From IMG/VR virus record IMGVR_UViG_3300017917_001342, positions 310,001-374,000 of that record: 64,000 nucleotides of DNA; one strand, written 5' to 3'. Position numbers and translations under genes: made by a program. How positions within the stretch are numbered: the stretch's first letter is position 1; every line of letters starts with the position of its first letter. Positions 7,995 through 51,240 of the stretch are shown here, one piece after another. Below the pieces are notes generated by a model. That model made no database searches, was not told the origin of the DNA, and worked only from the letters and a program-made list of their open reading frames with translations.

Positions 7995-8019
7995 TAGACG
8001 CAACACAGTGTTGCATCTA
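7995..8019 (-). terminator. hairpin, possible terminator, between ORF 8122-8634 and nrdA
   Basis: TAGATGCAAC-N5-GTTGCGTCTA stem. Confidence 0.4.
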
Positions 8020-8121
8020 TTAAAGCTATATCACTACGTTAACGATGCAGAGTGTTGCTGTTAACGTATTGAAAATTATTATCTATTTTTTGCGTTTGAC
8101 AGTAATTTAAGGTACAACTGA

Positions 8122-8634
8122 TCAGCATGTGTAATTGCTTTCCATCCATGATTGTGTTTCCTCAATTTGTCGTAGGCTAGAATTATAATTATACATCTGG
8201 CGATATTCTAAGTCACTCTCGTTGTCAAAATTTGACAAAATTCCGTGACGTAGACCTAGTAACCATTTGTTGTCAACAACACATACTAGTTGTTCTGTGC
8301 TGTATTTTCTATTAATAACCACCGCTAGTGATAAACGATTGCCAGACCATCTGCGATCGTCAGAATACAATAATGTATAGAACATACATAGACTAATAGT
8401 GTTAACGTCAAAGTCTTTGTTTTCGATTAACTCCCAGGGATCAGACCAAGTTGAACAATCTGTGTAGTCGATAACACGTTCACTGAGTGGTGCAGATTTC
8501 CACCAGTCGATTACAAGTTTAAATTGTTGTTCGTCGGTCAAATCAGTAGTAAGACTTTTGCGCAGTTCTCGCCATTGATGTCGCAGTTCTGTAGGATGTA
8601 GAAGGAAATGATTGTGCATAGGTATTGGTTGCAC
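8122..8634 (-). CDS. hypothetical protein
   Basis: 170-aa ORF co-oriented in the operon; WSDPWELI motif; no assignable function. Confidence 0.65.
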   Translation of the reverse strand: MQPIPMHNHFLLHPTELRHQWRELRKSLTTDLTDEQQFKLVIDWWKSAPLSERVIDYTDCSTWSDPWELIENKDFDVNTISLCMFYTLLYSDDRRWSGNRLSLAVVINRKYSTEQLVCVVDNKWLLGLRHGILSNFDNESDLEYRQMYNYNSSLRQIEETQSWMESNYTC

Positions 8635-8646
8635 CCCTCCAGGTTA

Positions 8647-10185
8647 TTATGTTGTCCAATATGTTGTTATAAAACTCATCATACCGTTTGTTGATCCGGT
8701 ACTAGTGTATCGTATCACTATGTTGTTTCCAGAAACTATTGCTCCAAAAACCACTGATTCACTAGTATTCAGCTCATTGCTGGTATCAGTTAACTGTACT
8801 GTCACAGTATCGGAAATAATAGATAACCTTCCATTTTTTCTATATGATCCCAATGAAAGAGAATAATCTACCCAAGCTGTTAACATGTTGGTTGCTGTTA
8901 GCAAACTAAATGTTATACCTGTAGAAGCATTGGTTTGTCCAGGTAATATAGTCGCAGTATCAGGAGTAGGATTAGTGTTGGTAAATTCTATTAATTGTGC
9001 ATCAAATATTACATTTGTTGAAGGTGATCCATTGTACACATATAGTGATGGGTTTATTTGATCAAATACATCACCTATACTAGAACAACTTGATGTAGCG
9101 TTACTCCAATATATAGCATAGCGATTATATTCGTTGCCAACATCAACGTAGTTGTTGTTGCTACTGGTAATACCTTCTCCAGTAGTTGTGGCATATAAAC
9201 CATATGAATCTATGGCACGGAATATGCTGTTGCTAATCTTTACATAGCTCGGACCAGAATCAGCACCTTCTATCAATCCAATACCAGTGTAGCATGTTAC
9301 AAACGAAGAATTGGTTACATTTACAAAACGTATAGGATCTTCCGAATACAATCCAAACGCAACATTGTTAACAACAATGTTGTTAAAATTAAGATATTCA
9401 GTTGAAGTAGCAGTACCTATGCTCTCTACAGTAATACCGTTTCCGGTACTATTAAATGCATCGCCCGGTTGCCATGCGCCTATTAACTTACAATTGTCCA
9501 TGTTGGTATTAGTACATCTCTGTAGCAATACCATTGTGTTCGGCGGATCTATACTGCTATCAAATGTAAAACCGCTAACAGTAATGTGTGTTGGTAAAAT
9601 ACCGCCATTTGTGCCAATATTTGCACCAGTCTGTCCTAAACTGTCAGCAGTGCGCAATACCGGACCAACATAACCTGCTTGCAACGTTATGATAGATCTA
9701 TCAATGCCATCTCCCATGAGAGTGATGTATGGATACAATTTGATTGTCGCAGTGATAAGATAATTACCTGCTGGGAAATAAATTGGATTTCTGCTTTGTG
9801 CATACGCTGCGGGATTTGCTGAAATACGTGCCCACTCATCAGCTATAGCTGCTTGAATTGCATCTGTATCATCTGTTATACCATCGCCTACTGCACCGTA
9901 ATCTTTCACGCACAGTGTATCATCGAGTATACTGCCAAGTGTGCGTATAGTAGGACCAGTTAATGCACTTACACCAGTATCGCCAACATAGGTGTGTTTA
10001 ATAATTTGGTCGTTTGGGCTCCATTGGGTAAGTACCTGACTGTTGCCAGTGTAGGTATTACCGTTACCAATGAATAGTTCTCTAGTGTCTAAACACCAGC
10101 CAAATTCTGCTTCGTTTAAGCTAGCAGGTAAATCAGCACGTAAACCTCTACGTTGCTGAATTCTACTGATTGATATGATAGCCAT
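8647..10185 (-). CDS. tailspike/tail fibre with an Mtd_N-like N-terminal domain and a pectate-lyase-like beta-helix
   Basis: RIQQRRG...EFGWCLDTRELFIGNG; VKDYGAVGDGITDDTDAIQAAI...IYFPAGNYLIT; late-promoter-like AATAAATA near 10212-10219. Confidence 0.8.
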   Translation of the reverse strand: MAIISISRIQQRRGLRADLPASLNEAEFGWCLDTRELFIGNGNTYTGNSQVLTQWSPNDQIIKHTYVGDTGVSALTGPTIRTLGSILDDTLCVKDYGAVGDGITDDTDAIQAAIADEWARISANPAAYAQSRNPIYFPAGNYLITATIKLYPYITLMGDGIDRSIITLQAGYVGPVLRTADSLGQTGANIGTNGGILPTHITVSGFTFDSSIDPPNTMVLLQRCTNTNMDNCKLIGAWQPGDAFNSTGNGITVESIGTATSTEYLNFNNIVVNNVAFGLYSEDPIRFVNVTNSSFVTCYTGIGLIEGADSGPSYVKISNSIFRAIDSYGLYATTTGEGITSSNNNYVDVGNEYNRYAIYWSNATSSCSSIGDVFDQINPSLYVYNGSPSTNVIFDAQLIEFTNTNPTPDTATILPGQTNASTGITFSLLTATNMLTAWVDYSLSLGSYRKNGRLSIISDTVTVQLTDTSNELNTSESVVFGAIVSGNNIVIRYTSTGSTNGMMSFITTYWTT

Positions 10186-11330: not shown

Positions 11331-11513
11331 TTATTCGATACCCAACAGTTTGCGAACATGTGCGGAAAGTTCGTCGCCGGTCATGGCAGGTCCAAAATCA
11401 GATTCTTTTACAGACAAAATACGATCAACATCTGCATCAGAAAAAGTTGGATCAATGTTAGACGTATCCAGGTACTCGTCCAGTTTGTTAGCTTTGAGAT
11501 CTTTGATACGCAT
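11331..11513 (-). CDS. small acidic protein, candidate antitoxin partner
   Basis: 60 aa, D/E-rich, stop 1 nt upstream of the toxin-like start. Confidence 0.5.
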   Translation of the reverse strand: MRIKDLKANKLDEYLDTSNIDPTFSDADVDRILSVKESDFGPAMTGDELSAHVRKLLGIE

Positions 11514-11820: not shown

Positions 11821-12003
11821 TCACCTATGTCTATTAGGCATGTGTCTATCTAACATGCCACGTAGCTGTTCAAAATTTATACCAACAAGGTCTTGTATTT
11901 GTTGATAACTTAGACCTTGCTTATATGCACGTTTTACTTTTCTAATAAGTTCTTTATCATTTGGCTTGATGTAAGCTTCTGTGGTAAATTCCTGTGCTCG
12001 CAT
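11821..12003 (-). CDS. small HTH protein
   Basis: AYKQGLSYQQIQDLVGINFEQLRGML; MRAQEFTTE leader. Confidence 0.6.
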   Translation of the reverse strand: MRAQEFTTEAYIKPNDKELIRKVKRAYKQGLSYQQIQDLVGINFEQLRGMLDRHMPNRHR

Positions 12004-12005
12004 TG

Positions 12006-12836
12006 TTACTCACCATATTTTGGCCAATTAACGCCGCTTCTTTCCCTACTACTAGGCCCTCTAAGACGTTGGTTATCACCTATGCCGCCGCGAGTCTTAG
12101 TTGTTGTTACAGCAACAGACGGTTTAGATTGTTTGTTAATTAAATGGTCTGTTCGTATTTCTATCCAATTTGGTAATCTTCTAAGGTGGTAATCAACTGT
12201 AGAGTTTTGTACATTTAAACCTAGCATCTTAGGAATACTGCTTGAACTATATCCTTTACTATATAAATCTGCCATTTGTTGCACTTGCTCAGGTGTTGTG
12301 CCTACTGTTAAACCCTGCTGCCCATATCGTTGTTTTTTTATTTCGTTATATTTGTCAACACCAATTAATTTATATAAAAGTTTAGGCACAGTGCTAATAT
12401 CTATGCCAAATTGGTCAGCAATATCAGTTGCAGATGCACCATTTAAAAACAAATCTGTAATCTGTTTTTTATCCTCGTCGGTTAATGCGTTACCTGCCAT
12501 TAACGTTTTATGTTGACGCTCGGGGTATTTAAGTTCTAATATTCTATTGACTTTTTTAAGAGGTATGCCAAGATCTTTAGAAATTGCAGTAGGACCTTTA
12601 CCTTCATCCCACAACATTTTTACTAGCTCAATAGTATCGTCATCTATAGGCTGTTGTAATCTTACTCTGTCTGTATAATGTCGTTTTATTATATGTCGAA
12701 CTTGGCTTACACTTAATCCAAGTTCATCTGCAATTGTACTAGAGCTTTTACCACTGTCTCTTTTAGATTTTATTAGATCAATTGTTTGTTGATCATACTT
12801 TTTAGATGTTTCGACTATAAACTCACTAGCTCTCAT
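12006..12836 (-). CDS. multi-HTH DNA-binding protein (four tandem HTH units)
   Basis: Four repeats of G.S...IA..LG....V; MRASEFIVE leader. Confidence 0.75.
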   Translation of the reverse strand: MRASEFIVETSKKYDQQTIDLIKSKRDSGKSSSTIADELGLSVSQVRHIIKRHYTDRVRLQQPIDDDTIELVKMLWDEGKGPTAISKDLGIPLKKVNRILELKYPERQHKTLMAGNALTDEDKKQITDLFLNGASATDIADQFGIDISTVPKLLYKLIGVDKYNEIKKQRYGQQGLTVGTTPEQVQQMADLYSKGYSSSSIPKMLGLNVQNSTVDYHLRRLPNWIEIRTDHLINKQSKPSVAVTTTKTRGGIGDNQRLRGPSSRERSGVNWPKYGE

Positions 12837-12840
12837 TGCA

Positions 12841-15330
12841 TCACCACTTGATATTCCACTGCAATGTATTGCCAGTGATTGGATTAGTTTGACGGTTTAT
12901 TGTGTAGCCCAAGTTAGTAAAGTACGCAATAACAGTGTCCATGCGTTCTGCATACGGGCGAGTTAGATTGGGATCACTAGGTGTTTGATTTTGCCATACT
13001 GCCCAATAATCTCTACTTGCAGGATATGGTTGTATACTCATAGTACCTGTACCATAGCCGATAGTTGCAGTTGCAGTTGCAGTATTACCTGTTAAATTAC
13101 TAGGCGCACTAATGGTAACTGCGGGCGCAGAATCATAACCGTCGCCGCTATTTGTGATAACAACTGTGTCTATACTAAAGCCTCTGATTACACTAGTCGT
13201 AGGCTGTATTGGCGAAACTGTTTCGCCTGCACCTGGTATTATGTTTACCTGTGGGTCACTGGTATAATTCTGCCCACCGTTTGTAACTACAATCTGCTCA
13301 ATACCTGTACTGTACAAACTGACATTCGCTGTTGCCGCACCGCCAATTGACACAGTTGGTACACTGGTATAGTTTTCGCCGTAATTAGTAAGTGATAGAT
13401 AATCAACTGTTGTAGGTCTCAATTGTGCAGATGCAACAGCACCGGACCCGTCGCCGTCAATGATAACTGTTGGTGCTAAGATATAACCACTACCTTCATT
13501 TACAACATCTATACTGACAATTTCACCGCCAACTATGTTAGGTGTTGCATAGGCATTTACACCGTGATTGGTAACAAAGGTTACAGTAGCAGTTGTGTAT
13601 CCAGAACCTGTGTTGCTAACATTAACATATTGTACACTAGTTGCTGACAATGTAGCAGTTGCAGTTGCTCCGCTACCGCTGGTAATTGTCACAGTTGGTA
13701 CAGCAGTGTATCCAGTACCAGGAGCAGTAACTACTACATTACTAACAGAACCGCTTGATAATAACGAATATGCACTGGCACCGTAACCAGTTAGATCGTT
13801 AGATGTAATTACTACAGTCGGGGGTGCAGTATATCCACTACCACCGTTTGACAACACAACACTACCAATACCAGCAGTTAGGTTAAAACTTGCTGCTTGA
13901 CCTGTGCCGCCGTATACAGCATTGTATGTCATTACAGGCAATACATTGTACGAACCACTGGTTTGTAGTGTGTACAGTACAATCTGTCCTTGTAGGCCAA
14001 CTTCGTCTACTCGTATAGTTGCAGTACTGGTACCAGACCCACCTGCAACTATCAGTACATCGCCGACACTGTATTGACTGCCTGCACCGCCTGTTACCAG
14101 ATTAGCACCGATGATATTCATATAAACCGCAGATACCGCAGCACCGCCGCCGGCAGCATTTATACTAACACCGGGCGGGCTTATGTAAGTTGCACCACCA
14201 TTGTTTAGCAATGTAATGTTACCAACTCCTGTTGGCACCAAGTAGGGCGTTGCTGTTGCACTGCTTCCGCTAGTGATCGTCACTGTTGGTGCCGATGTAT
14301 AGTTAGATCCTGGATTAGTAACTACAATACTTGTTACTGTACCGGCTGTTAAAACTGCTGTTGCAGTTGCACCAGTACCTCCACCTGACAATAAAACTCT
14401 AGGAGGTGCAGTATATTGACCCCCACTGTTACTAACTGCAATTGCAGATATACCCATTGTTAGATTAAGGGTACAGCCAGTGCCGCCTCCAGGTGCTACT
14501 GATGTAGACACAGCTATAAGTGTAGGAAGAGTGGTATAATTGCCGTAATTGAATAGACTTACAGTAACAACTTCTCCGTTACTGCCAATTGAAGTTACAA
14601 CTGCTGTGGTTGCCGAACCAACACCGCCAACTACACTTAAAACGTCCCCAATGTTATAATATTGTCCGCCTGCATTAACCTGTACAGAAACTGCTCTAAA
14701 TGACACAGTGCCTGCTACTGCACCGCTACCTTGTGCTACGATAGACACACTTGGTACATAGTGATATCCAGTACCCTGGTAGCCGACTGTGATATATGAA
14801 ATGTTACCGTAAGGTGCAAGGTATGCCATTGCAGTTGCTTCAACTGTTGCATTACCGCCTGTAAATGTAACAGTTGGTGTTGCAGTGTATCCACTACCGT
14901 TATTGGTAACTGTTATACTGTTAACACCCGATACTAAATCAATACTAATGGGACGTTTTGCAAGAGCATCTTGTTTAGTTGCAGCTAACTTAACAGTATC
15001 AACGTCAACATATATTATATAATAGATGACACCAGTAGTTAATGGACTTGGTAATTGTCCAGTACTACTAACAAACACTTCGTCGCCTGTGTTGTATCCA
15101 TGACCGGCAACTGTAAAAGTATTTGCCGTGTCATCAATAGTATAAACAGGTGTAGTAATAGCCGAACTCTGAGTCATAGGTGACCCATTGTTTACCAGTG
15201 CATTATAGTATCCTATACGCACTGCATCTAGTATTGCACTACTGATTGCAGTACCCTCATCAAATACTACACGTTCACGTATTGGATTCTGACGGGCTTC
15301 TGCCGCAGTAATGAAAATACTATTAGCCAT
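12841..15330 (-). CDS. virion structural protein with many G-S-G-Y-T-x-x-P-T-V beta repeats
   Basis: Recurrent NGGSGYTAPPTVVI-type units, Gly/Thr/Val rich. Confidence 0.75.
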   Translation of the reverse strand: MANSIFITAAEARQNPIRERVVFDEGTAISSAILDAVRIGYYNALVNNGSPMTQSSAITTPVYTIDDTANTFTVAGHGYNTGDEVFVSSTGQLPSPLTTGVIYYIIYVDVDTVKLAATKQDALAKRPISIDLVSGVNSITVTNNGSGYTATPTVTFTGGNATVEATAMAYLAPYGNISYITVGYQGTGYHYVPSVSIVAQGSGAVAGTVSFRAVSVQVNAGGQYYNIGDVLSVVGGVGSATTAVVTSIGSNGEVVTVSLFNYGNYTTLPTLIAVSTSVAPGGGTGCTLNLTMGISAIAVSNSGGQYTAPPRVLLSGGGTGATATAVLTAGTVTSIVVTNPGSNYTSAPTVTITSGSSATATPYLVPTGVGNITLLNNGGATYISPPGVSINAAGGGAAVSAVYMNIIGANLVTGGAGSQYSVGDVLIVAGGSGTSTATIRVDEVGLQGQIVLYTLQTSGSYNVLPVMTYNAVYGGTGQAASFNLTAGIGSVVLSNGGSGYTAPPTVVITSNDLTGYGASAYSLLSSGSVSNVVVTAPGTGYTAVPTVTITSGSGATATATLSATSVQYVNVSNTGSGYTTATVTFVTNHGVNAYATPNIVGGEIVSIDVVNEGSGYILAPTVIIDGDGSGAVASAQLRPTTVDYLSLTNYGENYTSVPTVSIGGAATANVSLYSTGIEQIVVTNGGQNYTSDPQVNIIPGAGETVSPIQPTTSVIRGFSIDTVVITNSGDGYDSAPAVTISAPSNLTGNTATATATIGYGTGTMSIQPYPASRDYWAVWQNQTPSDPNLTRPYAERMDTVIAYFTNLGYTINRQTNPITGNTLQWNIKW

Positions 15331-15661
15331 TCTTTATACTCTTTTTCGCTGCGCTACTTGCCATTTGGGCAACTTTGTCTTGACTGAACATTGCTTCTTC
15401 ATCAGATGCAGTTTCAGGCGTTTCTTCTGGTTGTAATATCACTTCATCTTTAGCAATACGTTGTATACCAGCTTTGTCTTTAAGTGCATCCATGACCCAA
15501 CGCTTGTCTGCATCAAATCCTTGATTATGTAATACACTTAAAATTTCATCCATTGGAATACTAGCGGCGTTTTTACTTTTATACACCGTCACAAGATCTA
15601 ATATAGCATTTTTTGCCTCTTCTGGTGTACTAGGTAAACTAACTATTTCTTTATAACGCAT
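15323..15661 (-). CDS. hypothetical protein
   Basis: 112-aa ORF overlapping the next gene by 8 nt. Confidence 0.65.
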   Translation of the reverse strand: MRYKEIVSLPSTPEEAKNAILDLVTVYKSKNAASIPMDEILSVLHNQGFDADKRWVMDALKDKAGIQRIAKDEVILQPEETPETASDEEAMFSQDKVAQMASSAAKKSIKNG

Positions 15662-15673
15662 TGCAGCATCCTA

Positions 15674-18661
15674 TTACTTTGATGCTGCAATGTCGAAATG
15701 TTCAGGCCCGATTAGTTTTGCGTTTTTAACGTCATTGAGTTGAACCCAATAGTCGCGTGCTTGTTGGTCCTTAAAGAACTTATAATTTTTTGCACCATTA
15801 GCACTTTCAACTATAACGCCCCACGGAGTAGTAGCTTTAATTTGCGCAAAACGATATGCTTTTTGTTCTTGCTCAACTACAGCTTGCATACGACGATTAC
15901 TTTCTGCATTGATTGAACTGATTTTGTTCTCAAGTCCTTTGATCATTTTTTGCATTTCCATTATCTTCTTTTCGATAATGTCGCCTTCTAGACCTTGGCC
16001 ATGTGCAAGTACGTCTTTAGTTCTACCTTCGACTACCATTCTGGTAAATTCAGCACGGTGATCAGCTAGCTGGCCTTCTAAGATTTTTTTACCTTTTTCA
16101 GCTCTCAACAGCAATGTGTTTAGACGACTGATGCTTTCGTCTACTTTTTCAATGCCTCTGGCTATTTTATGTCCACGAGTGATTATTTTCTTTGGTAGAT
16201 CCTTAGCTGGTTTGTTTGGATCCAAACCAGCTTCTTTCTTAGCTTGCCACATGCCTATAGCATAGGGATTCTTTTCTTTCTTAGCCTCAGCAACTTTCTT
16301 AGCTTTTGCTTTGTCAGCAACTGCTTTCTTCATTGACTCTTTTTTGTTGCCATCTTTGTCCATATCAAGAAAATCTGGCTTGGCTTTTTTAGCTTCTTCT
16401 ACGCCTTCTTTCTTAACATCGCCAAACTTGTCTTTTTGCTTAGCACGGATTGCAAAGTCAATTTGCTTGACTTCTTTTTGCTCAGCAGCAGTACGAGTTT
16501 CTTTGTCCATTAGGGATTTACGACGAGCACGAAGTTTAGCAAGTGTCCAACCGTCCCACTTGCCTTTATCTTTTTCAGCAGTTTTCATTTCGGTGTCCCA
16601 CTTTTCACCTAGGCGCTTGCGGCCTTCTGCAAGTTCCTCGCCCGGTACAGGCTTTTTAGCACGACCTAGTGGTTCTTCACCGCCTGCTGCCGCTGGTGTT
16701 GTACCAAACCCTTCTGGTTCTTCAATTTCTGGCTCTTCGCCTGGACCTGCTACTGCTGGTACATTTTCAATATCTGTAGTACCTGCACCAGGTATACCGC
16801 CATTTTGAATAGCTAGTACGGCGTTGTCGCTTTGTTCTTTTGCTTCCTGTGTTGCAGCAAGTAATGTATCTAATTGTGCTTTCATTACTTCGTTATATGC
16901 ATCAGCAGCTTCTGGGCCAAACTGTGATTTCATTGTGTCAACCAATGGCATTAATTCATCAACACCCATACGTGCGATTTTTTCTGCCATTGATTGTAGA
17001 TCATCACTGATGCTTTTTGCTGCAATCAGTGTTTCTGCTTGCTGTAGATCCTGATCTGCAGAATCTAATGCTTCTTTAACTGTTTTCTTTTTACTACCTG
17101 CAAATTGGCTCATGTCTGCATCCTTTTGATGTTCTTTTGCGTTTGCGGCAGCAAAAAACATGCCGCGGTTAAATTTTGGATTTGTTTTAGCAAATACTTC
17201 AGCATGGTGTTTAGCCATATGATGTCTTGCAATTGGATCTGGATGTTTTTTTATTAAATCTGCAACGAGTTTAAAATCTCGTTTTGAGATTTCTTCCTTC
17301 AATCCATACTTTCTGCTTTCTTCTAGACTGAATCTATCAGCAGCATGACGTTCAAAGTTTTTGTAATCTAAATAGTGCTTTGCACTGCTGATACCTTCAC
17401 TAGCGGTGGTGAGTTTCATTGCTACCCAGCCTTCTAACTTATCACCGGGTTGAATCATGTGGAACAATTTAACACTGTATTCAAAAATTTGAATTAGGTT
17501 TTGTCTAGCAATTGTACCAGTTGTATCTTCTAACTCGTCTGCATCTTCATCTAATGCAGACAGGTCTGGTTGTACTGTAGATCCAGGTAGTTGTTCTGGT
17601 TCAAACTTAGTATAATAATCCAAGTAATGGAATATCTTGTCAAGATACATTGCGTCTTTAGTTAAGTTTGCAGCTATCCACGGCTCAACATCATCTTCGG
17701 GATGTATCATCTTAAGCATGTCCATTGCATACTTTGCATTGCGATACAGTTCGCTACGAGCCATACTGGCCTGGTAATCGTGGTGTTGCATATGATTTTC
17801 TGACAATTTAGATTTAACTGATTCGTGTACTTGATATGTTTTGCCGCCAACTGTGAACGAATCTTTGTGTGCAGCTCTTGCAGAAGCCAATGCACCCGAA
17901 AACTCGTTACCTTCTTCTACATCGGCATCGGAAATGTCAACTCCGTATTTCTGTGCCATGTTTACAAGATCTGGGAATTTAGAAGCAAATTCTGATGTGC
18001 TATCTACATCGCCCATAGACATTTCATCAACTTTATCAGTTGACAATAAATCTACCTCAACAGGTTCTCTGTTTGAATGATGTTTGTCGTAGAGCTTAAA
18101 CCCAACTCGCATTACATGTATGTTGTCTTTTGCAAGCTGGCGGTCATCTTCATCATTTAATTCGTTGTTAGCACGAGATTCGTAATCGGCAATGAGATCT
18201 TTTACAGATTGCCAACGACCCTGATCTCCTACATTGATGAGATCATCACCAATACGACCAAATCCATTTAATATTTTCAGCATTTTGTCGTCATTTGTTG
18301 ATGCACGTTCTGCAAAATCAATCAGCCAGCGTCCCACTCTGGCTGCTTTGTTGTCTACAGTATGCAAAGTACCTTCTTTAAGGTGTCTAGGCCGACGTCT
18401 TGGCGCAATTTCTTTGAGATACAAACGTGTAGCTTCTATGATAAGCATATGTTTAGCATAATCCGGATTTGAATACCACGAATTAAATGCAGATTCATTT
18501 ACTATGCTGTTTTTAAGAAGTTCGCTGCTGGTGCTCAAAGTTTCAATTTGATCATCGGATGACTCATCTAAATTCAGATCAAACCCGTGTACATGTTTAA
18601 GAGTATGCACAATTTGATTTAATCTGTGCGTCGCTGATGTGTTAACGTCGTCTACGAACAT
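15674..18661 (-). CDS. large charged modular protein, putative prohead core/internal head protein
   Basis: K/E/A-rich; duplicated ~55-aa module; DFLDMDKDGN motif; late promoter CTAAATA upstream (~18711-18717). Confidence 0.55.
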   Translation of the reverse strand: MFVDDVNTSATHRLNQIVHTLKHVHGFDLNLDESSDDQIETLSTSSELLKNSIVNESAFNSWYSNPDYAKHMLIIEATRLYLKEIAPRRRPRHLKEGTLHTVDNKAARVGRWLIDFAERASTNDDKMLKILNGFGRIGDDLINVGDQGRWQSVKDLIADYESRANNELNDEDDRQLAKDNIHVMRVGFKLYDKHHSNREPVEVDLLSTDKVDEMSMGDVDSTSEFASKFPDLVNMAQKYGVDISDADVEEGNEFSGALASARAAHKDSFTVGGKTYQVHESVKSKLSENHMQHHDYQASMARSELYRNAKYAMDMLKMIHPEDDVEPWIAANLTKDAMYLDKIFHYLDYYTKFEPEQLPGSTVQPDLSALDEDADELEDTTGTIARQNLIQIFEYSVKLFHMIQPGDKLEGWVAMKLTTASEGISSAKHYLDYKNFERHAADRFSLEESRKYGLKEEISKRDFKLVADLIKKHPDPIARHHMAKHHAEVFAKTNPKFNRGMFFAAANAKEHQKDADMSQFAGSKKKTVKEALDSADQDLQQAETLIAAKSISDDLQSMAEKIARMGVDELMPLVDTMKSQFGPEAADAYNEVMKAQLDTLLAATQEAKEQSDNAVLAIQNGGIPGAGTTDIENVPAVAGPGEEPEIEEPEGFGTTPAAAGGEEPLGRAKKPVPGEELAEGRKRLGEKWDTEMKTAEKDKGKWDGWTLAKLRARRKSLMDKETRTAAEQKEVKQIDFAIRAKQKDKFGDVKKEGVEEAKKAKPDFLDMDKDGNKKESMKKAVADKAKAKKVAEAKKEKNPYAIGMWQAKKEAGLDPNKPAKDLPKKIITRGHKIARGIEKVDESISRLNTLLLRAEKGKKILEGQLADHRAEFTRMVVEGRTKDVLAHGQGLEGDIIEKKIMEMQKMIKGLENKISSINAESNRRMQAVVEQEQKAYRFAQIKATTPWGVIVESANGAKNYKFFKDQQARDYWVQLNDVKNAKLIGPEHFDIAASK

Positions 18662-18745
18662 GATAAAAAACTCTCCTGGCAGGGACCGCCGAATATTGAT
18701 TTGCTAGGTTTATTTAGCGGAAGATAAGAGAATTTTAAGTCGATA

Positions 18746-19063: not shown

Positions 19064-19706
19064 TGTTCAATGCTCGCTTTAGTTCAGCTTTAGCAGACAT
19101 TGCTAAATCAAGTGCCTTTTGATACTTGGTAGCATAGATGTCTTCTTTAATCATGTTGCCGGTTTTTTCTGCTTTTCTGTGTGCTAACTTTGCAGATATT
19201 GCGTCAACTCTATGGCTAGTATAACGTGCATCAATTTCAAATAGATTACGAACTTTGATATCGTTAACAAATTTGTTGTTGTTTAACAGTTTAACAACAC
19301 CCAACGCAACTTCGTATAGAGTAATGTCATCTGCGATCACAGTACCGGATGTTGCGTGTTCTATTCTGTAATATTGTTTACCAGCAATTCTACGTTCGTC
19401 GGTCATTATTTCTATCTTATAACCACCTACATTTACTGCACGGTCGCTACGAGTAGTCATTATGTCCATCTTGGTGTTAACGTCGCCGTTGCTTTCTAGC
19501 ATAACCTGATGAGTAACTTGATTGAGTTTGCTAAGCACATCTGCCATTGCGTTAATTTCACGCTGTGTTACAACACCCGGACCTGCTAGCTCAACACCTT
19601 CTGTTATTGGTGCAGATCCAGAAGTAGACATAGCCGGCGGTGTTTCGCCGTTCATAATAGCCATCATTCTGGCCATTGCTTCGCGTTCTTCGTTACTAAC
19701 TACCAT
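19053..19706 (-). CDS. hypothetical protein
   Basis: 217-aa ORF, coupled to both neighbours. Confidence 0.7.
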   Translation of the reverse strand: MVVSNEEREAMARMMAIMNGETPPAMSTSGSAPITEGVELAGPGVVTQREINAMADVLSKLNQVTHQVMLESNGDVNTKMDIMTTRSDRAVNVGGYKIEIMTDERRIAGKQYYRIEHATSGTVIADDITLYEVALGVVKLLNNNKFVNDIKVRNLFEIDARYTSHRVDAISAKLAHRKAEKTGNMIKEDIYATKYQKALDLAMSAKAELKRALNNAN

Positions 19707-19936
19707 CAGTCTCTCTCCATGTATTCTATATCATTATAAGAGTAACACAGTTTACCTTCAATCATCACACGATCCAAAACTCCTCGAAAAACTAATTGTC
19801 TAGCAAGTTCTTGTTCGCGTTCATTGAGTTGTCGTTTGGGAAGAGGTTCACCGTTGCCTTTAACACGTTCCATAACTAGCATTTCATCATTGCTAATAGG
19901 AACCATCAAGCCACCAGTTATTTCAACAAATCTCAT
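19706..19936 (-). CDS. hypothetical protein
   Basis: 76-aa ORF with overlapping start/stop on both sides. Confidence 0.65.
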   Translation of the reverse strand: MRFVEITGGLMVPISNDEMLVMERVKGNGEPLPKRQLNEREQELARQLVFRGVLDRVMIEGKLCYSYNDIEYMERD

Positions 19937-21781: not shown

Positions 21782-21991
21782 TTATTTAGATTTGCGGCTC
21801 TTTTTACGCTTAGTTTCGGTTGGTTGTGGAATATAGCCAAACAAACTAGGACGTCTGTTTATCGCGCTCATGGGATTTGCTACACTAGCTATACTACCTG
21901 CAGAAGTTGCACCGCCAGATGCACTTTCTATGATATCTATAATTTTTTTGTCTCTGTCGTTTGCAAATTCTTTGAGTTTCACGATAATCAT
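21782..21991 (-). CDS. small hypothetical protein
   Basis: IIESASGGATSAGSIA motif, basic tail; overlaps the upstream stop. Confidence 0.55.
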   Translation of the reverse strand: MIIVKLKEFANDRDKKIIDIIESASGGATSAGSIASVANPMSAINRRPSLFGYIPQPTETKRKKSRKSK

Positions 21992-23136
21992 TCCTTACGC
22001 ATAAAATGTGGTCTATCTACTAGTTTAATTTTAGCAGTTGGAGTATCTGCTACGTACCCTTCATGCCCTTGCTGTCCGTGCAATATTGCACCTATTGTAT
22101 TACCAACTTGTTTATCAACATTGCTACGTATATAGTCTTTAAGCTTCACTAATTGTTCTACTATTGTCCAAAGTGCATTATACCCGTGTTCATGCTGACT
22201 GATCCAGTCTAGCATATTTGCACGTTTGTTTTCTGTCAGTTTACTTTCAGGACTACTTATCCAGGTGATAAATCCGTGCTTAGCATCAGACACCCCTCGA
22301 ATTCCATGAGATGCTCTCTGTGCTAGATACTGTTTTAGTTTAGCACTTAGGTCTGACAGTTTAGCGGCACGCAGTTGATCAATATCTAAAAACGTATCTA
22401 TTTCAGACCTAGATCTAGTTATTAAAGTGTCTATTGCAGTTTTTATATTGTTTGGGACATGTACAACTTCTAGATCATGTATTTCAGGGCCCATTATGAC
22501 TAAACCTGCAATGTCTTTGAGACCCAATTTACTAACATTGCCTATTGCACGAGAATCGTCAACTGATTGATCGTCGAACTCGCTGTGTACAACAATGCCG
22601 GCAATGCTGTTGCTTATTTTGTTACCGAGCAAACTGTCAACCGGTATTGAATAGGTAATTTTGTTTGGTTTGAATACGTAGTTGCCATTGATTATTTGAG
22701 GTTTAGACGTCCAAAGTACGTCACCTTGCAGATAACCTTTGTAGTCGTCTGGTACTGCACTATCTAGTAATGGATACAATTTTGCTATGCTGTCTGCGTA
22801 TACTTCTCTACCAACTTCGTTTGGTTTACGCATAAACAGCATTTGTTGGACTTCAGCTTGGCTGCGTGGCATGCCGCCCGGTTTTTTGCTGTTAAATCCG
22901 CTCTTATCGGTCAATACCATACCAGGAGAATAATCTCTACCGAATATGATTGCAGGACTACCATCCCACTTAATGCTTACACTTCTAGGCTCTTCTGCTG
23001 CATGAATCATTGCAGCAAGTGCTTTTTTAGCACCTAAAGTCCCTTCGTCGAACACAAGATCTTCTGGATGATCAATTCGTGCTTTTGCTTCTGTTATAAA
23101 CCAACGTTGTGGTACTACAATATCTAGGTGCCGCAT
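21988..23136 (-). CDS. ATP-dependent ligase-like nucleotidyltransferase (DUF6267-like)
   Basis: IKWDGSPA (KxDG motif I), HEGYV (motif IV-like), KIKLVDR (motif V-like). Start is probably MRHLD at 23136. Confidence 0.55.
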   Translation of the reverse strand: MRHLDIVVPQRWFITEAKARIDHPEDLVFDEGTLGAKKALAAMIHAAEEPRSVSIKWDGSPAIIFGRDYSPGMVLTDKSGFNSKKPGGMPRSQAEVQQMLFMRKPNEVGREVYADSIAKLYPLLDSAVPDDYKGYLQGDVLWTSKPQIINGNYVFKPNKITYSIPVDSLLGNKISNSIAGIVVHSEFDDQSVDDSRAIGNVSKLGLKDIAGLVIMGPEIHDLEVVHVPNNIKTAIDTLITRSRSEIDTFLDIDQLRAAKLSDLSAKLKQYLAQRASHGIRGVSDAKHGFITWISSPESKLTENKRANMLDWISQHEHGYNALWTIVEQLVKLKDYIRSNVDKQVGNTIGAILHGQQGHEGYVADTPTAKIKLVDRPHFMRKE

Positions 23137-35261: not shown

Positions 35262-36887
<1,626 letters not shown>

Positions 36888-36898
36888 TTATTCTCCTA

Positions 36899-37189
36899 TT
36901 AATCAAGCACTGCAAAGATTTCGTCTTCTTTAAGAATCAACAGATCCTCACCTTGGTGGCGAATCTGCGTACCAGAATGCTTACCAAACAGCACACGGTT
37001 ACTAACTGTAACGTCAATTGGAAGATAGTTGCCATTGCGGTCTTTCTTGCCCGGACCGACTGCTAGCACAACACCTACATTTGGTTTTTCAGCGACAGAA
37101 TCTGGGATAACGAGACCACCTTTAGTGACATTATCGCTGTCCACTCTTTTTACTATGACCCTATCATTAAGCGGTCTTAGATCTGACAT
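36899..37189 (-). CDS. groS: co-chaperonin GroES
   Basis: PLNDRVIV, GGLVIP mobile loop, VLAVGPG. Confidence 0.97.
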   Translation of the reverse strand: MSDLRPLNDRVIVKRVDSDNVTKGGLVIPDSVAEKPNVGVVLAVGPGKKDRNGNYLPIDVTVSNRVLFGKHSGTQIRHQGEDLLILKEDEIFAVLD

Positions 37190-47679: not shown

Positions 47680-48495
47680 TTATCCCTTCTTTATGAATTC
47701 TGGTTTGTTAGGTGCTTTGGGTGCTGCAAGATTTACTCTGTTTCCGTCTGCATCTTTGTAAAACTTGTAAAGATGTGCTGCACCATCATCAAAATTGCCC
47801 TCTGGGCCTAAACCACTGCGAGGTGTTGGAGGTTGTGTATTATTAGAGGCTTTTGATACTGGTTTAGGTGTATCATATCTTGCATTAAAATCGGCTGTAT
47901 CTTGTGTTGGTTCTGCAGATTTAACCTTGCTCATATCAAGCCAACTAAACAACGGAGTAGGAGCATTGTACTCGTCGCTAGGGCGATGTTGTTTTACAGA
48001 TGCAAGATAATCTAAAAAGCGTTTGTTGTATGCATCACCGAATATATCTGTTGTAACAGGCTGTTCAACATCTTGGTATAAACGGTCAGTGCTTAATCTG
48101 GCAGCAGGTGTTAACCCTTTGTCAAATGCTGCAATTTTGAAACCTTTTTCGATCATGCCGCGATCAGCGTTGGTTTCGACAGGTTCGGTTGCAGTACGCA
48201 CAACTATTAATTTTTCAGCAACATTTAAGACTTCTCTCAAGCCTTCCATTGTTACATAACTGCTGAGAGGCTGGCCTGTTACAAAATTAATTTGGTGTAC
48301 TATATGGTTTGGTATGTCAATAAAATCTAGATTGTCACCTGTAATTTTTTGAGGTGCAGTAATATCTAGCAGATTAAATTGCTGCAAATAACTAGCTATA
48401 GCAGCACATTGCTCATCAGTTGGTTCTACAACTAATTTTATTACATAGCCGTATTCTCTAGCGTTTTCTGCCAGATATTGCTTAAATGACTTCAT
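47680..48495 (-). CDS. hypothetical protein with a T4 CTS-like leader
   Basis: MKSFKQYLAE; CTAAATA promoter at ~48522-48528. Confidence 0.7.
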   Translation of the reverse strand: MKSFKQYLAENAREYGYVIKLVVEPTDEQCAAIASYLQQFNLLDITAPQKITGDNLDFIDIPNHIVHQINFVTGQPLSSYVTMEGLREVLNVAEKLIVVRTATEPVETNADRGMIEKGFKIAAFDKGLTPAARLSTDRLYQDVEQPVTTDIFGDAYNKRFLDYLASVKQHRPSDEYNAPTPLFSWLDMSKVKSAEPTQDTADFNARYDTPKPVSKASNNTQPPTPRSGLGPEGNFDDGAAHLYKFYKDADGNRVNLAAPKAPNKPEFIKKG

Positions 48496-48519: not shown

Positions 48520-49026
48520 TTATTTAGCAGGGTTTTGCAATTCACCGAGCTGTTTAAGCAGTTCGTTACGATCCAGCATAGTAGCTTTGCCTTCTACTGT
48601 ATCTGTAGTGGTTGGTTTATATGATCTGTCCATCTTTAATTTGTCTAATTGAAGCTTTAACATTTTGAGTTTTTTATCAACTTTACTGTTTTTAGCATCA
48701 ACAGCAATTTTTAACATTTGGCTACTACTGCTGAATATTTCACCTGCGTGTCGTATTTCAACGTTCATACCAAGGTCTTGAAGATCTTTGTGTGCTTGAA
48801 TAGCAAGTTCTGCTAATTCATCCATTTCTTCATCGTGTACATCACGACCTCTGGCTTCACTTAATTGTTTATCAATTTGATCAGCTAGTTCTAATGCAGC
48901 ACGAATTTCTGTTTCTGGTAAATTTGTTTGTTCGTCAGCAACAGTATCATCATCGTCAAATGCATCAGTATCATCTATACTGTCTAATTCAAATGTACTT
49001 TCTAAAGTTCTAAACCTTTTGCTCAT
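48520..49026 (-). CDS. putative terminase small subunit (gp16-like)
   Basis: Helical profile with C-term LDRNELLKQL; position near gp17 and gp4. Confidence 0.5.
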   Translation of the reverse strand: MSKRFRTLESTFELDSIDDTDAFDDDDTVADEQTNLPETEIRAALELADQIDKQLSEARGRDVHDEEMDELAELAIQAHKDLQDLGMNVEIRHAGEIFSSSSQMLKIAVDAKNSKVDKKLKMLKLQLDKLKMDRSYKPTTTDTVEGKATMLDRNELLKQLGELQNPAK

Positions 49027-49467: not shown

Positions 49468-49944
49468 TTATCTACCTATTGCTGCTGCTATTGTGGGACC
49501 AAGAGTTGGGTTGTTACTCCAATTCGGTGTTAGGTTTAGACCAACATATCCAATTTGACTACTGGGATCTCGTATACTGTTAATGGTATATAAGAAGTCG
49601 TTTAATAGTACACCTTGTTTAAACAGGTTTTGTACTGGCTGCCCTGTTTGTGTTGCATAATATGTTGCTAGGTTTGCTAACACTTCGATTAGATCGTCCG
49701 GTACACCTTGCCCGCCAAACAAACCCTTTGCTAAATTATAGGTCTGTGCTTGCATACCTGTTACGTATACAGCAGGTGCTTGCGATAAACCATAATTTGT
49801 TGCATCACTTGCAGATGAAACAGGATTTCCACTACCATCGGCAAATTGCCAATTACCGTTTCTATTAACAACTTGTAACTGACCGCTGTTTAATGCAAGT
49901 TGCTTTCGTATGTTGTTTAATATTACATCTTTGTTAAGAGCCAT
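49468..49944 (-). CDS. hypothetical protein
   Basis: 158 aa, coupled. Confidence 0.65.
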   Translation of the reverse strand: MALNKDVILNNIRKQLALNSGQLQVVNRNGNWQFADGSGNPVSSASDATNYGLSQAPAVYVTGMQAQTYNLAKGLFGGQGVPDDLIEVLANLATYYATQTGQPVQNLFKQGVLLNDFLYTINSIRDPSSQIGYVGLNLTPNWSNNPTLGPTIAAAIGR

Positions 49945-51221: not shown

Positions 51222-51240
51222 GAAAATATTTATACCAATA

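What the first reader, a model, noticed from the sequence alone, without database searches (positions are those of the whole stretch)
11821..12836. T4 capsid-targeting-sequence-like leaders on non-structural-looking proteins
Seen: N-termini MRAQEFTTE (11821-12003), MRASEFIVE (12006-12836), MKSFKQYLAE (47680-48495) and MRHLDIVVPQRWFITE (ligase-like gene). Established: T4 internal proteins carry the leader MKTYQEFIAE, which is removed by gp21 after Glu. Inference: HTH proteins and the ligase-like enzyme are packaged in the head and injected with the DNA.
Basis: partly seen in the sequence, partly recalled or inferred. Interest (0 to 1): 0.6.

Follow-up and report, generated by a model that had tools for sequence, protein, structure and literature searches.

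The report
Capsid-targeting leaders on jumbo-phage cargo proteins
A 519-kb T4-related jumbo phage puts a short T4-like address tag, ending at a predicted head-protease cut site, on unrelated DNA-binding proteins and enzymes, so these are probably loaded into the capsid and delivered with the DNA; this would let injected cargo be predicted from sequence alone.

Summary
All four reported N-termini are real and sit at the first ATG of their reading frames. The motif M[RK]AxEF occurs five times in the six-frame translation of the 518,643-bp phage genome, each time at an ORF start (expected 0.018).

Evidence that it is a T4-type capsid-targeting leader:
- **Conservation.** It is invariant across 17 multi-HTH homologs that share only 35-46% identity and diverge right after Glu9.
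- **Unrelated carriers.** It sits on several families with no other similarity.
- **Cut site.** It usually ends in [LI]-x-Glu, the T4 gp21 cleavage motif.
- **Protease and capsid.** The genome encodes a gp21-family protease and a gp23-family capsid protein.
- **Ligase-like enzyme (DUF6267).** Of 116 homologs, 105 carry such a leader. In 114 a Glu lies just before the conserved domain, with L or I at P3 in 112. Cyanophage homologs lack the leader.
- **Experimental link.** In Agrobacterium phage Atu_ph07, analogous leaders mark 25 mass-spectrometry-detected virion proteins in 12 unrelated groups. All four leader-bearing proteins here that have Atu_ph07 homologs match virion proteins.

No virion data exist for the HTH or ligase-like proteins themselves. 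Cleavage and injection are inferred. I rate this a new member of a known kind, interest about 0.6.

The parts
12006..12836 (-). Gene for a 276-aa basic protein. Layout: 9-aa leader MRASEFIVE, four HTH modules, then a conserved disordered C-terminal tail. Predicted packaged cargo.
   Evidence: ORF. Pfam HTH_23, HTH_38 and HTH_7. The AF2 model has four 3-helix domains, with residues 1-12 and 239-276 disordered. The mature part has pI 9.5. R2, A3, E5, F6 and E9 are invariant in 17 homologs.
12810..12836 (-). Leader codons 1-9 of the 276-aa gene. Predicted cleavage after Glu9; P3 is Ile.
   Evidence: The gp21 motif L/I-X-E is from PMC9026906.
11821..12003 (-). Gene for a 60-aa basic single-HTH protein with leader MRAQEFTTE. 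It is a paralog of the 276-aa protein.
   Evidence: ORF. BLAST E=1.5e-4 to the 276-aa protein after trimming the leaders. The ortholog in L025 starts MRVHEFTTE. P3 is Thr, so the L/I-x-E rule is not met.
21988..23136 (-). Gene for a 382-aa ligase-like protein (DUF6267, KxDG motif). A 16-aa N-terminal extension ends in ITE just before the conserved domain.
   Evidence: Pfam DUF6267 at E=1e-35, matching from residue 21. Among 116 homologs, 105 have the leader start, 114 have a Glu just before the conserved box, and P3 is L or I in 112 of those 114. Cyanophage homologs lack the leader.
47680..48495 (-). Gene for a 271-aa virion protein with the T4-CTS-like N-terminus MKSFKQYLAE.
   Evidence: Homolog of Atu_ph07 gp113. 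gp113 was detected in virions with 11 peptides and 61.7% coverage. Its true start, MKTLQDYLTE, lies upstream of the annotated start. Hit to phrog_14802, a virion structural protein family.
15323..15661 (-). 112-aa gene with a leader-like N-terminus (MRYKEIV...), in the same operon.
   Evidence: Weak hit to a virion-protein PHROG. Its N-terminus resembles that of the Atu_ph07 virion protein gp47; homology between the two was not tested.
19706..19936 (-). 76-aa gene with a leader-like N-terminus (MRFVEIT...).
   Evidence: Homolog of the Atu_ph07 virion protein gp46.
11331..11513 (-). 60-aa ORF with a leader-like N-terminus (MRIKDL...), downstream in the same gene string.
   Evidence: The motif class is the one defined. 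Not followed further.
12841..18661 (-). Upstream structural genes of the same gene string: 995 aa, 112 aa and 829 aa. The HTH genes follow after gaps of only 2-4 nt.
   Evidence: The 829-aa protein hits virion structural PHROGs. The 995-aa protein is homologous to the Atu_ph07 virion protein gp44. Gene order is the same in the relative locus L012.
18711..18717 (-). CTAAATA, a T4-type late-promoter-like element 50 nt upstream of the 995-aa gene. No similar element in a gene-upstream position follows on this strand until 10218; the only other match (12526-12532) lies inside the 276-aa gene.
   Evidence: Genome-wide, this motif class is concentrated just upstream of gene starts.
48521..48527 (-). 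CTAAATA late-promoter-like element 26 nt upstream of the 271-aa gene.

Best explanation
**What the phage is.** The window lies in a 518,643-bp jumbo phage with T4-type head genes.

**What the element is.** A short N-terminal leader acts as a capsid-targeting propeptide of the T4 CTS type. Its tight form is M-[RK]-A-x-E-F-[IVT]-x-E. A looser form is M-[KR]-hydrophobic-x-[DE]-hydrophobic, mostly ending in [LI]-x-E.

**Proposed mechanism, step by step.**
1. The genes are transcribed late, together with structural genes (inferred).
2. The leader docks the protein onto the scaffolding core while the prohead assembles (inferred by analogy with T4).
3. The gp21-family protease cuts after the Glu and releases the mature protein inside the head (inferred; the motif and the enzyme are shown to be present).
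4. The cargo stays with the packaged DNA and enters the host cell with it (inferred).

**Cargo in this window.**
- A basic four-HTH DNA-binding protein, modelled as small domains joined by flexible linkers.
- Its single-HTH paralog.
- A DUF6267 ligase-like nucleotidyltransferase.
- A gp113-like virion protein.

The HTH proteins most likely coat or mark the phage DNA. They may condense it, shield it from host nucleases, or set up early gene control, much as the T-even internal proteins do.
For: **Leader is non-random and selected at the protein level.**
- The tight motif occurs only at ORF starts: 5 observed versus 0.018 expected.
- Codon choice differs between copies, so selection acts on the peptide, not the DNA.
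- In 17 HTH homologs (35-46% identity; 3, 4 or 6 HTH repeats) R2, A3, E5, F6 and E9 are invariant, and similarity drops immediately after E9.
- In the AF2 model residues 1-12 are a disordered appendage outside the folded domains.

**Leader is shared by unrelated proteins.**
- After trimming the leaders, BLAST finds no similarity between the families. They are the HTH proteins, the 249-aa, 58-aa and 71-aa proteins, and the Gly/Ala-rich and 81-aa basic proteins of relatives.
- The 249-aa family also keeps [LI]xE just before its conserved domain.

**The processing machinery is present.**
- A gp21-family protease: Pfam S77 at 88.8 bits and PDB 5JBL at E=9e-13. It has His and Ser where the crystallised T4 chain has Ala at the two presumed active-site positions.
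- A gp23-family capsid protein with conserved L-x-E and V-x-E sites in its N-terminal region.
- The 71-aa leader-bearing gene lies immediately after the portal gene. Its PA5oct and Atu_ph07 homologs were detected in virions.

**DUF6267 ligase-like family.**
- 105 of 116 homologs start with the leader pattern.
- 114 of 116 have a Glu just before the conserved box. Among these, P3 is L or I in 112 and P1' is Ala or Ser in 104.
- T4-like cyanophage homologs lack the extension.

**Genomic context.**
- The HTH genes follow virion structural genes after 2-4 nt gaps. A late-promoter-like element lies upstream.
- The region is syntenic with Atu_ph07's cluster of virion proteins.
- Cargo content between the conserved flanking genes varies between relatives, from 1 to 4 HTH genes plus other leader-bearing genes. 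This resembles the T-even Ip hotspots (PMC12373910).

**Experimental link through Atu_ph07.**
- All 140 rows of the published virion proteome were matched to ORFs by molecular weight.
- 25 virion proteins in 12 unrelated groups carry M[RK][WLY]x[QDE]L..E-type leaders.
- With a regex written after seeing the data: 17 of 135 virion ORFs versus 1 of 693 other ORFs, p=2.6e-13.
- With regexes fixed beforehand on this genome: p=0.058 and p=0.008.
- All 4 leader-bearing proteins here that have Atu_ph07 homologs map to virion proteins, against a background of 47 of 125. One of these four is an amidoligase-like enzyme.
Against: - There are no virion, N-terminal or expression data for this phage, and none for any homolog of the HTH or DUF6267 proteins. 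Atu_ph07 and Phosso lack both families.
- The strong Atu_ph07 statistic uses a motif defined after seeing the virion list. 14 of the 25 proteins belong to one paralog family. The pre-specified tests are weak (p=0.058 and p=0.008).
- The Atu_ph07 proteome does not say whether those proteins are in the head or elsewhere in the virion, nor whether their leaders are removed.
- The 60-aa HTH leader has Thr at P3, and the portal-adjacent protein has Glu at P3.
- In the cyanophage Syn1 the leaderless DUF6267 gene lies among replication genes and is not annotated as a virion protein. The enzyme is therefore not intrinsically a virion component.
- The complex prediction for protease plus the 60-aa protein gave no answer.
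Confidence: 0.62

Rival explanations
1. The leader does mark virion proteins, but it is not a head-interior, cleaved, injected cargo signal. It could be an assembly or interaction tag for another part of the virion (tail, baseplate or whisker-like fibres), or an uncleaved structural N-terminus.
For: - The Atu_ph07 proteome gives only presence in whole virions.
- The gp53-63 paralog family could be an external structure.
- In the 271-aa family the leader runs straight into a conserved strand, and the Phosso homolog lacks the Glu.
Against: - The near-universal [LI]xE followed by Ala or Ser, right at the leader-domain junction, fits the specificity of the prohead protease, which acts inside the prohead (PMC9026906).
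- A leader-bearing gene lies between the portal and protease genes.
- The core sequence EFI[AV]E is the same as in the T4 CTS.
Confidence: 0.15
2. The N-terminal motif serves another purpose. It could be a docking peptide for a replication or transcription factor: the MKLxDLF variants resemble the beta-clamp motif QLxLF and the T4 clamp-binding LDFLF. Alternatively it could be a translation-initiation feature of late, partly leaderless mRNAs.
For: - About 19 genes have a late-promoter-like element ending 4-5 nt before the ATG, which implies leaderless mRNAs. Several of these carry the motif.
- The 199-212 kb run of MKLxD[LI]F genes includes nucleotidyltransferases with no homology to structural proteins.
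Against: - The HTH genes have ordinary Shine-Dalgarno spacing and no promoter directly upstream, yet they keep the leader.
- Synonymous codons vary between copies.
- The motif class is enriched among experimentally detected virion proteins of Atu_ph07.
- The resemblance to clamp-binding motifs comes from my own knowledge and was not tested.
Confidence: 0.1
3. The HTH proteins are ordinary cytoplasmic DNA-binding proteins, such as late regulators, a small-terminase-like factor, or partners of homing endonucleases. Their shared N-terminus would then reflect only paralogy and gene conversion among tandem copies.
For: - HTH modules cross-hit profiles for small terminase, transposase and resolvase.
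- The genes occur as tandem paralogs.
Against: - The same leader occurs on non-HTH proteins.
- The leader is invariant across contigs whose proteins share only 35% identity.
- The model shows no oligomerisation domain.
- The genes are not next to the large terminase gene at 43449-45035. One to four copies per genome is unlike a small terminase subunit.
Confidence: 0.08

Closest known systems
T4 and T-even internal proteins IPI, IPII and IPIII (Ip1-3) with the capsid targeting sequence MKTYQEFIAE
   Same: - A leader of about 10 aa is shared by otherwise unrelated small proteins.
- The core EFI[AV]E is identical.
- The leader ends in L/I-x-Glu, the gp21 cleavage motif.
- The genes sit in variable hotspots.
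- The phage has gp21-, gp22- and gp23-type head genes.
- The HTH cargo is basic, like the DNA-associated internal proteins.
   Different: - The consensus is one residue shorter and starts MRA rather than MKTYQ.
- The cargo here is arrays of 1-6 HTH DNA-binding modules and enzymes, not GmrSD inhibitors.
- The host phage is a roughly 0.5-Mb jumbo phage of the Atu_ph07/Rak2-like lineage.
- The number of leader-bearing genes is much larger, about 20-25.
- Packaging and cleavage have not been tested.
T4 Alt (packaged ADP-ribosyltransferase) and gp24, both with short N-terminal propeptides removed by gp21
   Same: - An enzyme carries a short cleavable N-terminal propeptide and is delivered with the DNA.
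- Here the candidates are a DUF6267 ligase-like enzyme, an amidoligase-like protein whose Atu_ph07 homolog gp196 is in virions, and a protein with a weak PARP/ART hit.
   Different: - The enzyme families are different.
- The ART assignment is below the Pfam cut-off.
- The Alt and gp24 propeptide sequences are recalled from my own knowledge and were not retrieved with the tools.
Ejection and inner-body proteins of phiKZ, 201phi2-1 and SPN3US
   Same: Many head proteins, including enzymes such as the virion RNA polymerase, are processed after Glu by a gp21-related protease and then ejected into the host (PMC5694885; PMC9026906).
   Different: - Those phages use the motif S/A/G-x-E and mostly long propeptides of more than 100 aa.
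- Here the propeptides are 9-16 aa and the motif is T4-like L/I-x-E.
Atu_ph07 virion proteome (Attai et al. 2018, PMC6102473)
   Same: - It is the nearest cultured relative.
- 25 of its virion proteins begin with an analogous 8-9-aa leader ending in Glu.
- gp46, gp113, gp196 and gp199 are homologs of leader-bearing proteins of this genome.
   Different: - Its consensus is MRWxQLTE or MRLIDLLE rather than MRAxEFIxE.
- It has no homolog of the HTH or DUF6267 proteins.
- In the passages I searched, the paper does not mention these leaders or prohead processing.

Membership tests
T4-type CTS propeptide cargo (internal proteins) | A short N-terminal leader shared by otherwise unrelated proteins of one phage | tested here: met
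   M[RK]A.EF appears on 5 ORF starts, against 0.018 expected. After trimming the leaders, only the two HTH paralogs are related by BLAST.
T4-type CTS propeptide cargo (internal proteins) | The leader ends in the gp21 cleavage motif L/I-x-Glu | tested here: inconclusive
   Met for the 276-aa HTH protein (IVE; P3 is I or V in all 17 homologs). Met for DUF6267 (ITE; 112 of 114 homologs), the 249-aa protein (INE), the 58-aa protein (INE) and the 271-aa protein (LAE). Not met for the 60-aa HTH protein (TTE) or the portal-adjacent 71-aa protein (EFE).
T4-type CTS propeptide cargo (internal proteins) | The phage encodes a gp21-family (S77) prohead protease and T4-type head genes | tested here: met
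   PF03420 at 88.8 bits, genome 407489-408130. PDB 5JBL at E=9e-13. Gp23 family at 310 bits. The portal, scaffold-like gene and capsid gene are in T4 order.
T4-type CTS propeptide cargo (internal proteins) | The protein is physically present in the mature head | not testable with these tools
   Only indirect evidence exists. Atu_ph07 homologs of four other leader-bearing proteins are in virions. There are no data for the HTH or DUF6267 proteins.
T4-type CTS propeptide cargo (internal proteins) | The leader is removed after Glu during head maturation | not testable with these tools
   This needs N-terminal sequencing or a semi-tryptic mass-spectrometry search. The complex prediction gave no answer.
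T4-type CTS propeptide cargo (internal proteins) | The leader alone is sufficient to target a foreign protein into the head | not testable with these tools
   This is a bench experiment: leader-reporter fusions.
T4-type CTS propeptide cargo (internal proteins) | The genes lie in variable hotspots, with cargo differing between related phages | tested here: met
   Between the conserved 830-aa structural gene and the exonuclease gene, this window has 2 HTH genes. L012 has 4 plus a 124-aa gene. In L013/L014, where the upstream neighbours differ, the genes before the conserved exonuclease are 1 HTH gene plus 81-aa and 191-aa leader-bearing genes.
T4-type CTS propeptide cargo (internal proteins) | Late expression together with head genes | tested here: inconclusive
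   A CTAAATA element lies upstream of the gene string, and gaps between genes are only 2-4 nt. There are no transcript data.
Helix-turn-helix DNA-binding proteins (HTH_23, HTH_38, HTH_7) | A significant profile match and a three-helix fold | tested here: met
   HTH_23 at 47.2 bits, above the 24.6 cut-off; HTH_38 at 39.1; HTH_7 at 36.7. The AF2 model has four 3-helix modules.
Small terminase subunit | An HTH plus an oligomerisation domain, a single-copy gene, adjacent to the large terminase gene | tested here: not met
   The model shows no oligomerisation domain. There are 1-4 tandem paralogs. The gene lies about 31 kb from the large terminase gene at 43449-45035.
DUF6267 (ligase-like nucleotidyltransferase) | A Pfam match above the cut-off and the KxDG motif | tested here: met
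   124.2 bits against a 27-bit cut-off. KWDG is at residue 56. Catalytic activity was not tested.

The most novel reading that the evidence does not exclude
T4-related jumbo phages of the Atu_ph07/Rak2-like lineage use lineage-specific 8-16-aa N-terminal 'zip codes' that end in [LI]-x-Glu. These load dozens of non-structural proteins into the capsid for co-injection. The cargo includes tandem-HTH DNA-coating proteins, a ligase-like nucleotidyltransferase, an amidoligase, other nucleotidyltransferases and a possible ADP-ribosyltransferase. If so, the injected effector set of uncultured giant phages can be read directly from their genomes. The multi-HTH proteins would be a new class of phage-delivered DNA-bound proteins.
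Probability: 0.45. Interest if true: 0.72.

Novelty: new member of a known kind. Interest (0 to 1): 0.6.

Why it matters
Proteins injected with phage DNA act before any phage gene is expressed. In T4 they are dedicated anti-restriction weapons.

- **Prediction from sequence.** A leader that can be recognised from sequence would allow systematic prediction of injected cargo in uncultured jumbo phages. These phages carry hundreds of genes of unknown function.
- **New cargo types.** It points to cargo not seen in T4: arrays of HTH DNA-binding modules and a widespread ligase-like enzyme family (DUF6267, more than 800 homologs).
- **Reinterpretation of published data.** It gives a reading of the Atu_ph07 virion proteome. 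About 25 virion proteins of unknown function there share an N-terminal leader that the passages I searched in the paper do not mention.
- **Possible tool.** The leader could also serve as a packaging tag for engineering such phages, as the T4 CTS has.

Tried and rejected
- **Near-identity DNA search and tblastn of the HTH protein against cultured phages.** No match.
- **tblastn of the 249-aa protein against cultured phages.** No match.
- **Complex prediction, gp21-like protease with the 60-aa HTH protein.** Verdict 'no answer', score 0.00. This is not evidence either way.
- **IMG/VR and metagenome scans for more HTH loci.** Only 2 and 5 loci were found, so the clade is rare in those collections.
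- **PA5oct, first 150 kb scanned for the motif.** Three real genes carry it and two of them were detected by mass spectrometry. This is too few to test, so I dropped it.
- **DNA pattern search for MRxxEFxxE starts in Atu_ph07 and Phosso.** The only hit was the Phosso portal-adjacent gene. The tight consensus is therefore specific to this clade.
- **Loose criterion, [LI]xE within the first 11 residues.** Rejected as uninformative: 4.9% versus 4.3%.
- **MKKFKQF start at genome 66722.** Rejected as a leader. There is an upstream in-frame Met, and the match lies inside a T7 gp0.7-like kinase profile.
- **One mistyped call.** A family search on a 3-residue stretch returned an error.
- **PHROG and Pfam scans of the 199-212 kb leader-bearing gene run.** No structural annotation was found.
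Full report
**Where the window lies.** The window is bases 310001-374000 of a 518,643-bp virus record with direct terminal repeats. No cultured phage is close at the DNA level. Protein matches lead to the jumbo phages Agrobacterium phage Atu_ph07 (490 kb) and Sinorhizobium phage Phosso. The genome encodes a T4 gp21-family prohead protease (Pfam S77, 88.8 bits; PDB 5JBL at E=9e-13). It also encodes a gp23-family major capsid protein (310 bits). The head genes run in the T4 order: portal, small protein, (two further genes), protease, scaffold-like protein, capsid protein.

**Checking the observation.** All four reported N-termini are real. Each sits at the first ATG of its reading frame on the minus strand.
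- The 276-aa protein (12006-12836) has four HTH modules (Pfam HTH_23, HTH_38 and HTH_7).
- The AF2 model shows four three-helix domains joined by flexible linkers. Residues 1-12 and 239-276 are disordered.
- The 60-aa protein (11821-12003) is a single-HTH paralog.
- Both mature proteins are basic, with pI 9.5 and 10.2, against a genome median of 6.0.

**Is it more than chance?** The pattern M[RK]A.EF occurs five times in the six-frame translation of the whole genome, and all five are at ORF starts. The number expected from position-specific N-terminal composition is 0.018.
- Besides the two HTH proteins, the carriers are a 249-aa protein (genome 200139), a 58-aa protein (495464) and a 71-aa protein immediately downstream of the portal gene (410447).
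- Codon choice differs between the copies, so selection is on the peptide.
- After trimming the leaders, none of these proteins is related to another, apart from the two HTH paralogs.
- A looser pattern, M[KR]-hydrophobic-x-[DE]-hydrophobic, marks 19 of 697 N-termini against 3 of 3334 internal Met positions.
- Merely having [LI]xE near the N-terminus is not enriched.

**Conservation in the HTH family.** Seventeen homologs from metagenomes share 35-46% identity with the window protein and carry 3, 4 or 6 HTH repeats. All begin MRA[SH]EF[IV]xE. R2, A3, E5, F6 and E9 are invariant, and similarity collapses immediately after E9.
- In a 184-kb relative contig, four tandem HTH paralogs each start with the same nine residues. 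They follow the same structural genes of 1325, 112 and 830 aa.
- In other relatives the same leader sits on an 81-aa basic protein and on Gly/Ala-rich proteins.
- Leader-bearing cargo thus varies between related contigs: in the window and L012 it sits between the same flanking genes, and in L013/L014 it again lies just upstream of the conserved exonuclease gene. The T-even Ip hotspots behave the same way (PMC12373910).
- The 249-aa family also keeps [LI]xE just before its conserved domain, although its leaders vary more.

**The ligase-like enzyme.** The gene at 21988-23136 belongs to DUF6267 and has a KWDG motif. The Pfam domain begins at residue 21.
- Of 116 homologs with the conserved box, 105 start M[RK]xx[DEQH]-hydrophobic.
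- In 114, a Glu lies just before the box. P3 is Leu or Ile in 112, and P1' is Ala (93) or Ser (11).
- Leaders are 9-10 or 16 residues long.
- This matches the published gp21 specificity L/I-X-E (PMC9026906).
- Homologs in T4-like cyanophages and in phage Melnitz start directly at the box, with no leader. In Syn1 the gene sits among replication genes and is not annotated as a virion protein.
- The leader therefore looks like an add-on acquired in one lineage, as expected for an address tag.

**Expression context.**
- The HTH genes follow the structural genes of 995, 112 and 829 aa after gaps of only 2-4 nt.
- A CTAAATA element, resembling the T4 late promoter, lies 50 nt upstream of the 995-aa gene. 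No other such element in a gene-upstream position follows on that strand until 10218; the only other match (12526-12532) lies inside the 276-aa gene.
- Genome-wide, this motif class is concentrated just upstream of gene starts.
- Late co-transcription with structural genes is inferred from this. It has not been shown.

**An experimental link through Atu_ph07.** I fetched the Atu_ph07 genome. I then matched all 140 rows of the published virion proteome (Attai et al. 2018, Table S5) to ORFs by molecular weight.
- Twenty-five virion proteins begin with an analogous 8-9-residue leader ending in Glu, of the types MRWxQLTE and MRLIDLLE. They fall into 12 groups unrelated by BLAST.
- A regex written after seeing these gives 17 of 135 virion ORFs against 1 of 693 others (p=2.6e-13).
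- The two regexes fixed beforehand on the window's genome give 3/135 against 3/693 (p=0.058) and 5/135 against 4/693 (p=0.008).
- Four leader-bearing proteins of this genome have Atu_ph07 homologs: gp46, gp113, gp196 and gp199. All four are virion proteins, against a background of 47 of 125.
- gp196 is the homolog of an amidoligase-like enzyme, so an enzyme with such a leader is packaged in this group of phages.
- gp113's true start, MKTLQDYLTE, lies upstream of its annotated start.
- The portal-adjacent small protein was also detected by mass spectrometry in PA5oct. In every one of its five homologs a Glu lies just before the conserved core.
- The HTH locus is syntenic with Atu_ph07's cluster of virion proteins of unknown function.

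**Interpretation.** The most economical reading is a T4-type capsid-targeting propeptide. The leader would dock the protein to the assembling core. The gp21-like protease would cut after the Glu, and the mature protein would stay with the DNA and enter the host with it. The small HTH modules on flexible linkers fit passage through the portal and tail channel; this point is my inference.
- Shown here: the motif, its conservation, its spread across unrelated families, the presence of the protease, and the link between this motif class and virion proteins in a relative.
- Inferred: docking, cleavage, location inside the head, and injection.

**Weak points.**
- There are no data on the HTH or DUF6267 proteins themselves.
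- The strongest statistic is post hoc and partly driven by one paralog family.
- The proteome does not separate head from tail.
- The 60-aa leader (TTE) and the 71-aa leader (EFE) do not fit L/I-x-E.
- The 271-aa protein is probably a true structural protein rather than cargo, and its Phosso homolog lacks the Glu.

**Novelty.** CTS leaders are textbook for T-even phages. Long propeptides are known for phiKZ-like phages. Short T4-like leaders in the Atu_ph07/Rak2-like jumbo lineage do not appear in the papers I could search. The same holds for HTH arrays and a DUF6267 enzyme as cargo. I therefore file this as a new member of a known kind.

Noticed in passing
whole genome; in the window, for example 51227-51233 (-) upstream of the gene at 49944-51221: About 19 genes have a T4-late-promoter-like [AC]TAAATA(T) that ends only 4-5 nt before the ATG. 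This would give leaderless late mRNAs. A second, broad peak of spacings lies at 18-30 nt.
   Followed up: partly
window 12006-12836, C-terminal residues 239-276: The HTH family has a strongly conserved, disordered, basic C-terminal tail that ends in either ...GVNWPKYG or ...KWGMxKP. It occurs in no other protein of the genome, and its role is unknown.
   Followed up: partly
genome 198961-212198 (+), outside the window (locus L026): A run of at least 9 consecutive genes starts with M[KR]Lx[DE][LI]F-type residues. It includes cytidylyltransferase-like and Pol-beta-type nucleotidyltransferase proteins. These may be further packaged enzymes. The motif also resembles clamp-binding peptides.
   Followed up: partly
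genome 297158-298264 (-), locus L029:2158-3264: A 368-aa protein has the leader MQINDILTE, a promoter-like element 4 nt before the ATG, and a weak PARP/ADP-ribosyltransferase hit (E=0.0018, below the cut-off). It could be an analog of the packaged T4 enzyme Alt.
   Followed up: partly
genome 51876-53402 (+), locus L027:1876-3402: An amidoligase_2-domain protein has the leader MKINEV. Its Atu_ph07 homolog gp196 is a virion protein with 14 peptides.
   Followed up: partly
locus L002 (Atu_ph07, MF403008.1) 8001-8756: The annotated start of Atu_ph07 gp113 is probably too far downstream. The reading frame and the homology extend 29 codons upstream, to a start reading MKTLQDYLTE.
   Followed up: yes
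window 35262-36884 (-) and 36899-37189 (-): Two adjacent genes look like GroEL (540 aa) and GroES (96 aa), judged from their N-terminal sequences. That would be a phage-encoded chaperonin pair. No profile search was run.
   Followed up: no
genome 404101-404652 (-), locus L010:1101-1652: A 183-aa gene lies two genes downstream of the capsid gene. It starts MRNFISIVE, with the same IVE ending as the HTH leader, and has a weak GapR-like DNA-binding hit (E=0.0023). It may be another head-internal DNA-binding protein.
   Followed up: no
genome 66722-67291 (+), locus L007:3722-4291: An ORF matches the T7 gp0.7-like protein kinase PHROG, a family annotated as a host transcription shut-off kinase (E=1.4e-8).
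   Followed up: no
window 12841-15330 (-): The 829-aa protein is built of many short repeats of a ...TVT.TGG.GY-type unit. It hits several very large virion, baseplate and fibre PHROGs.
   Followed up: no
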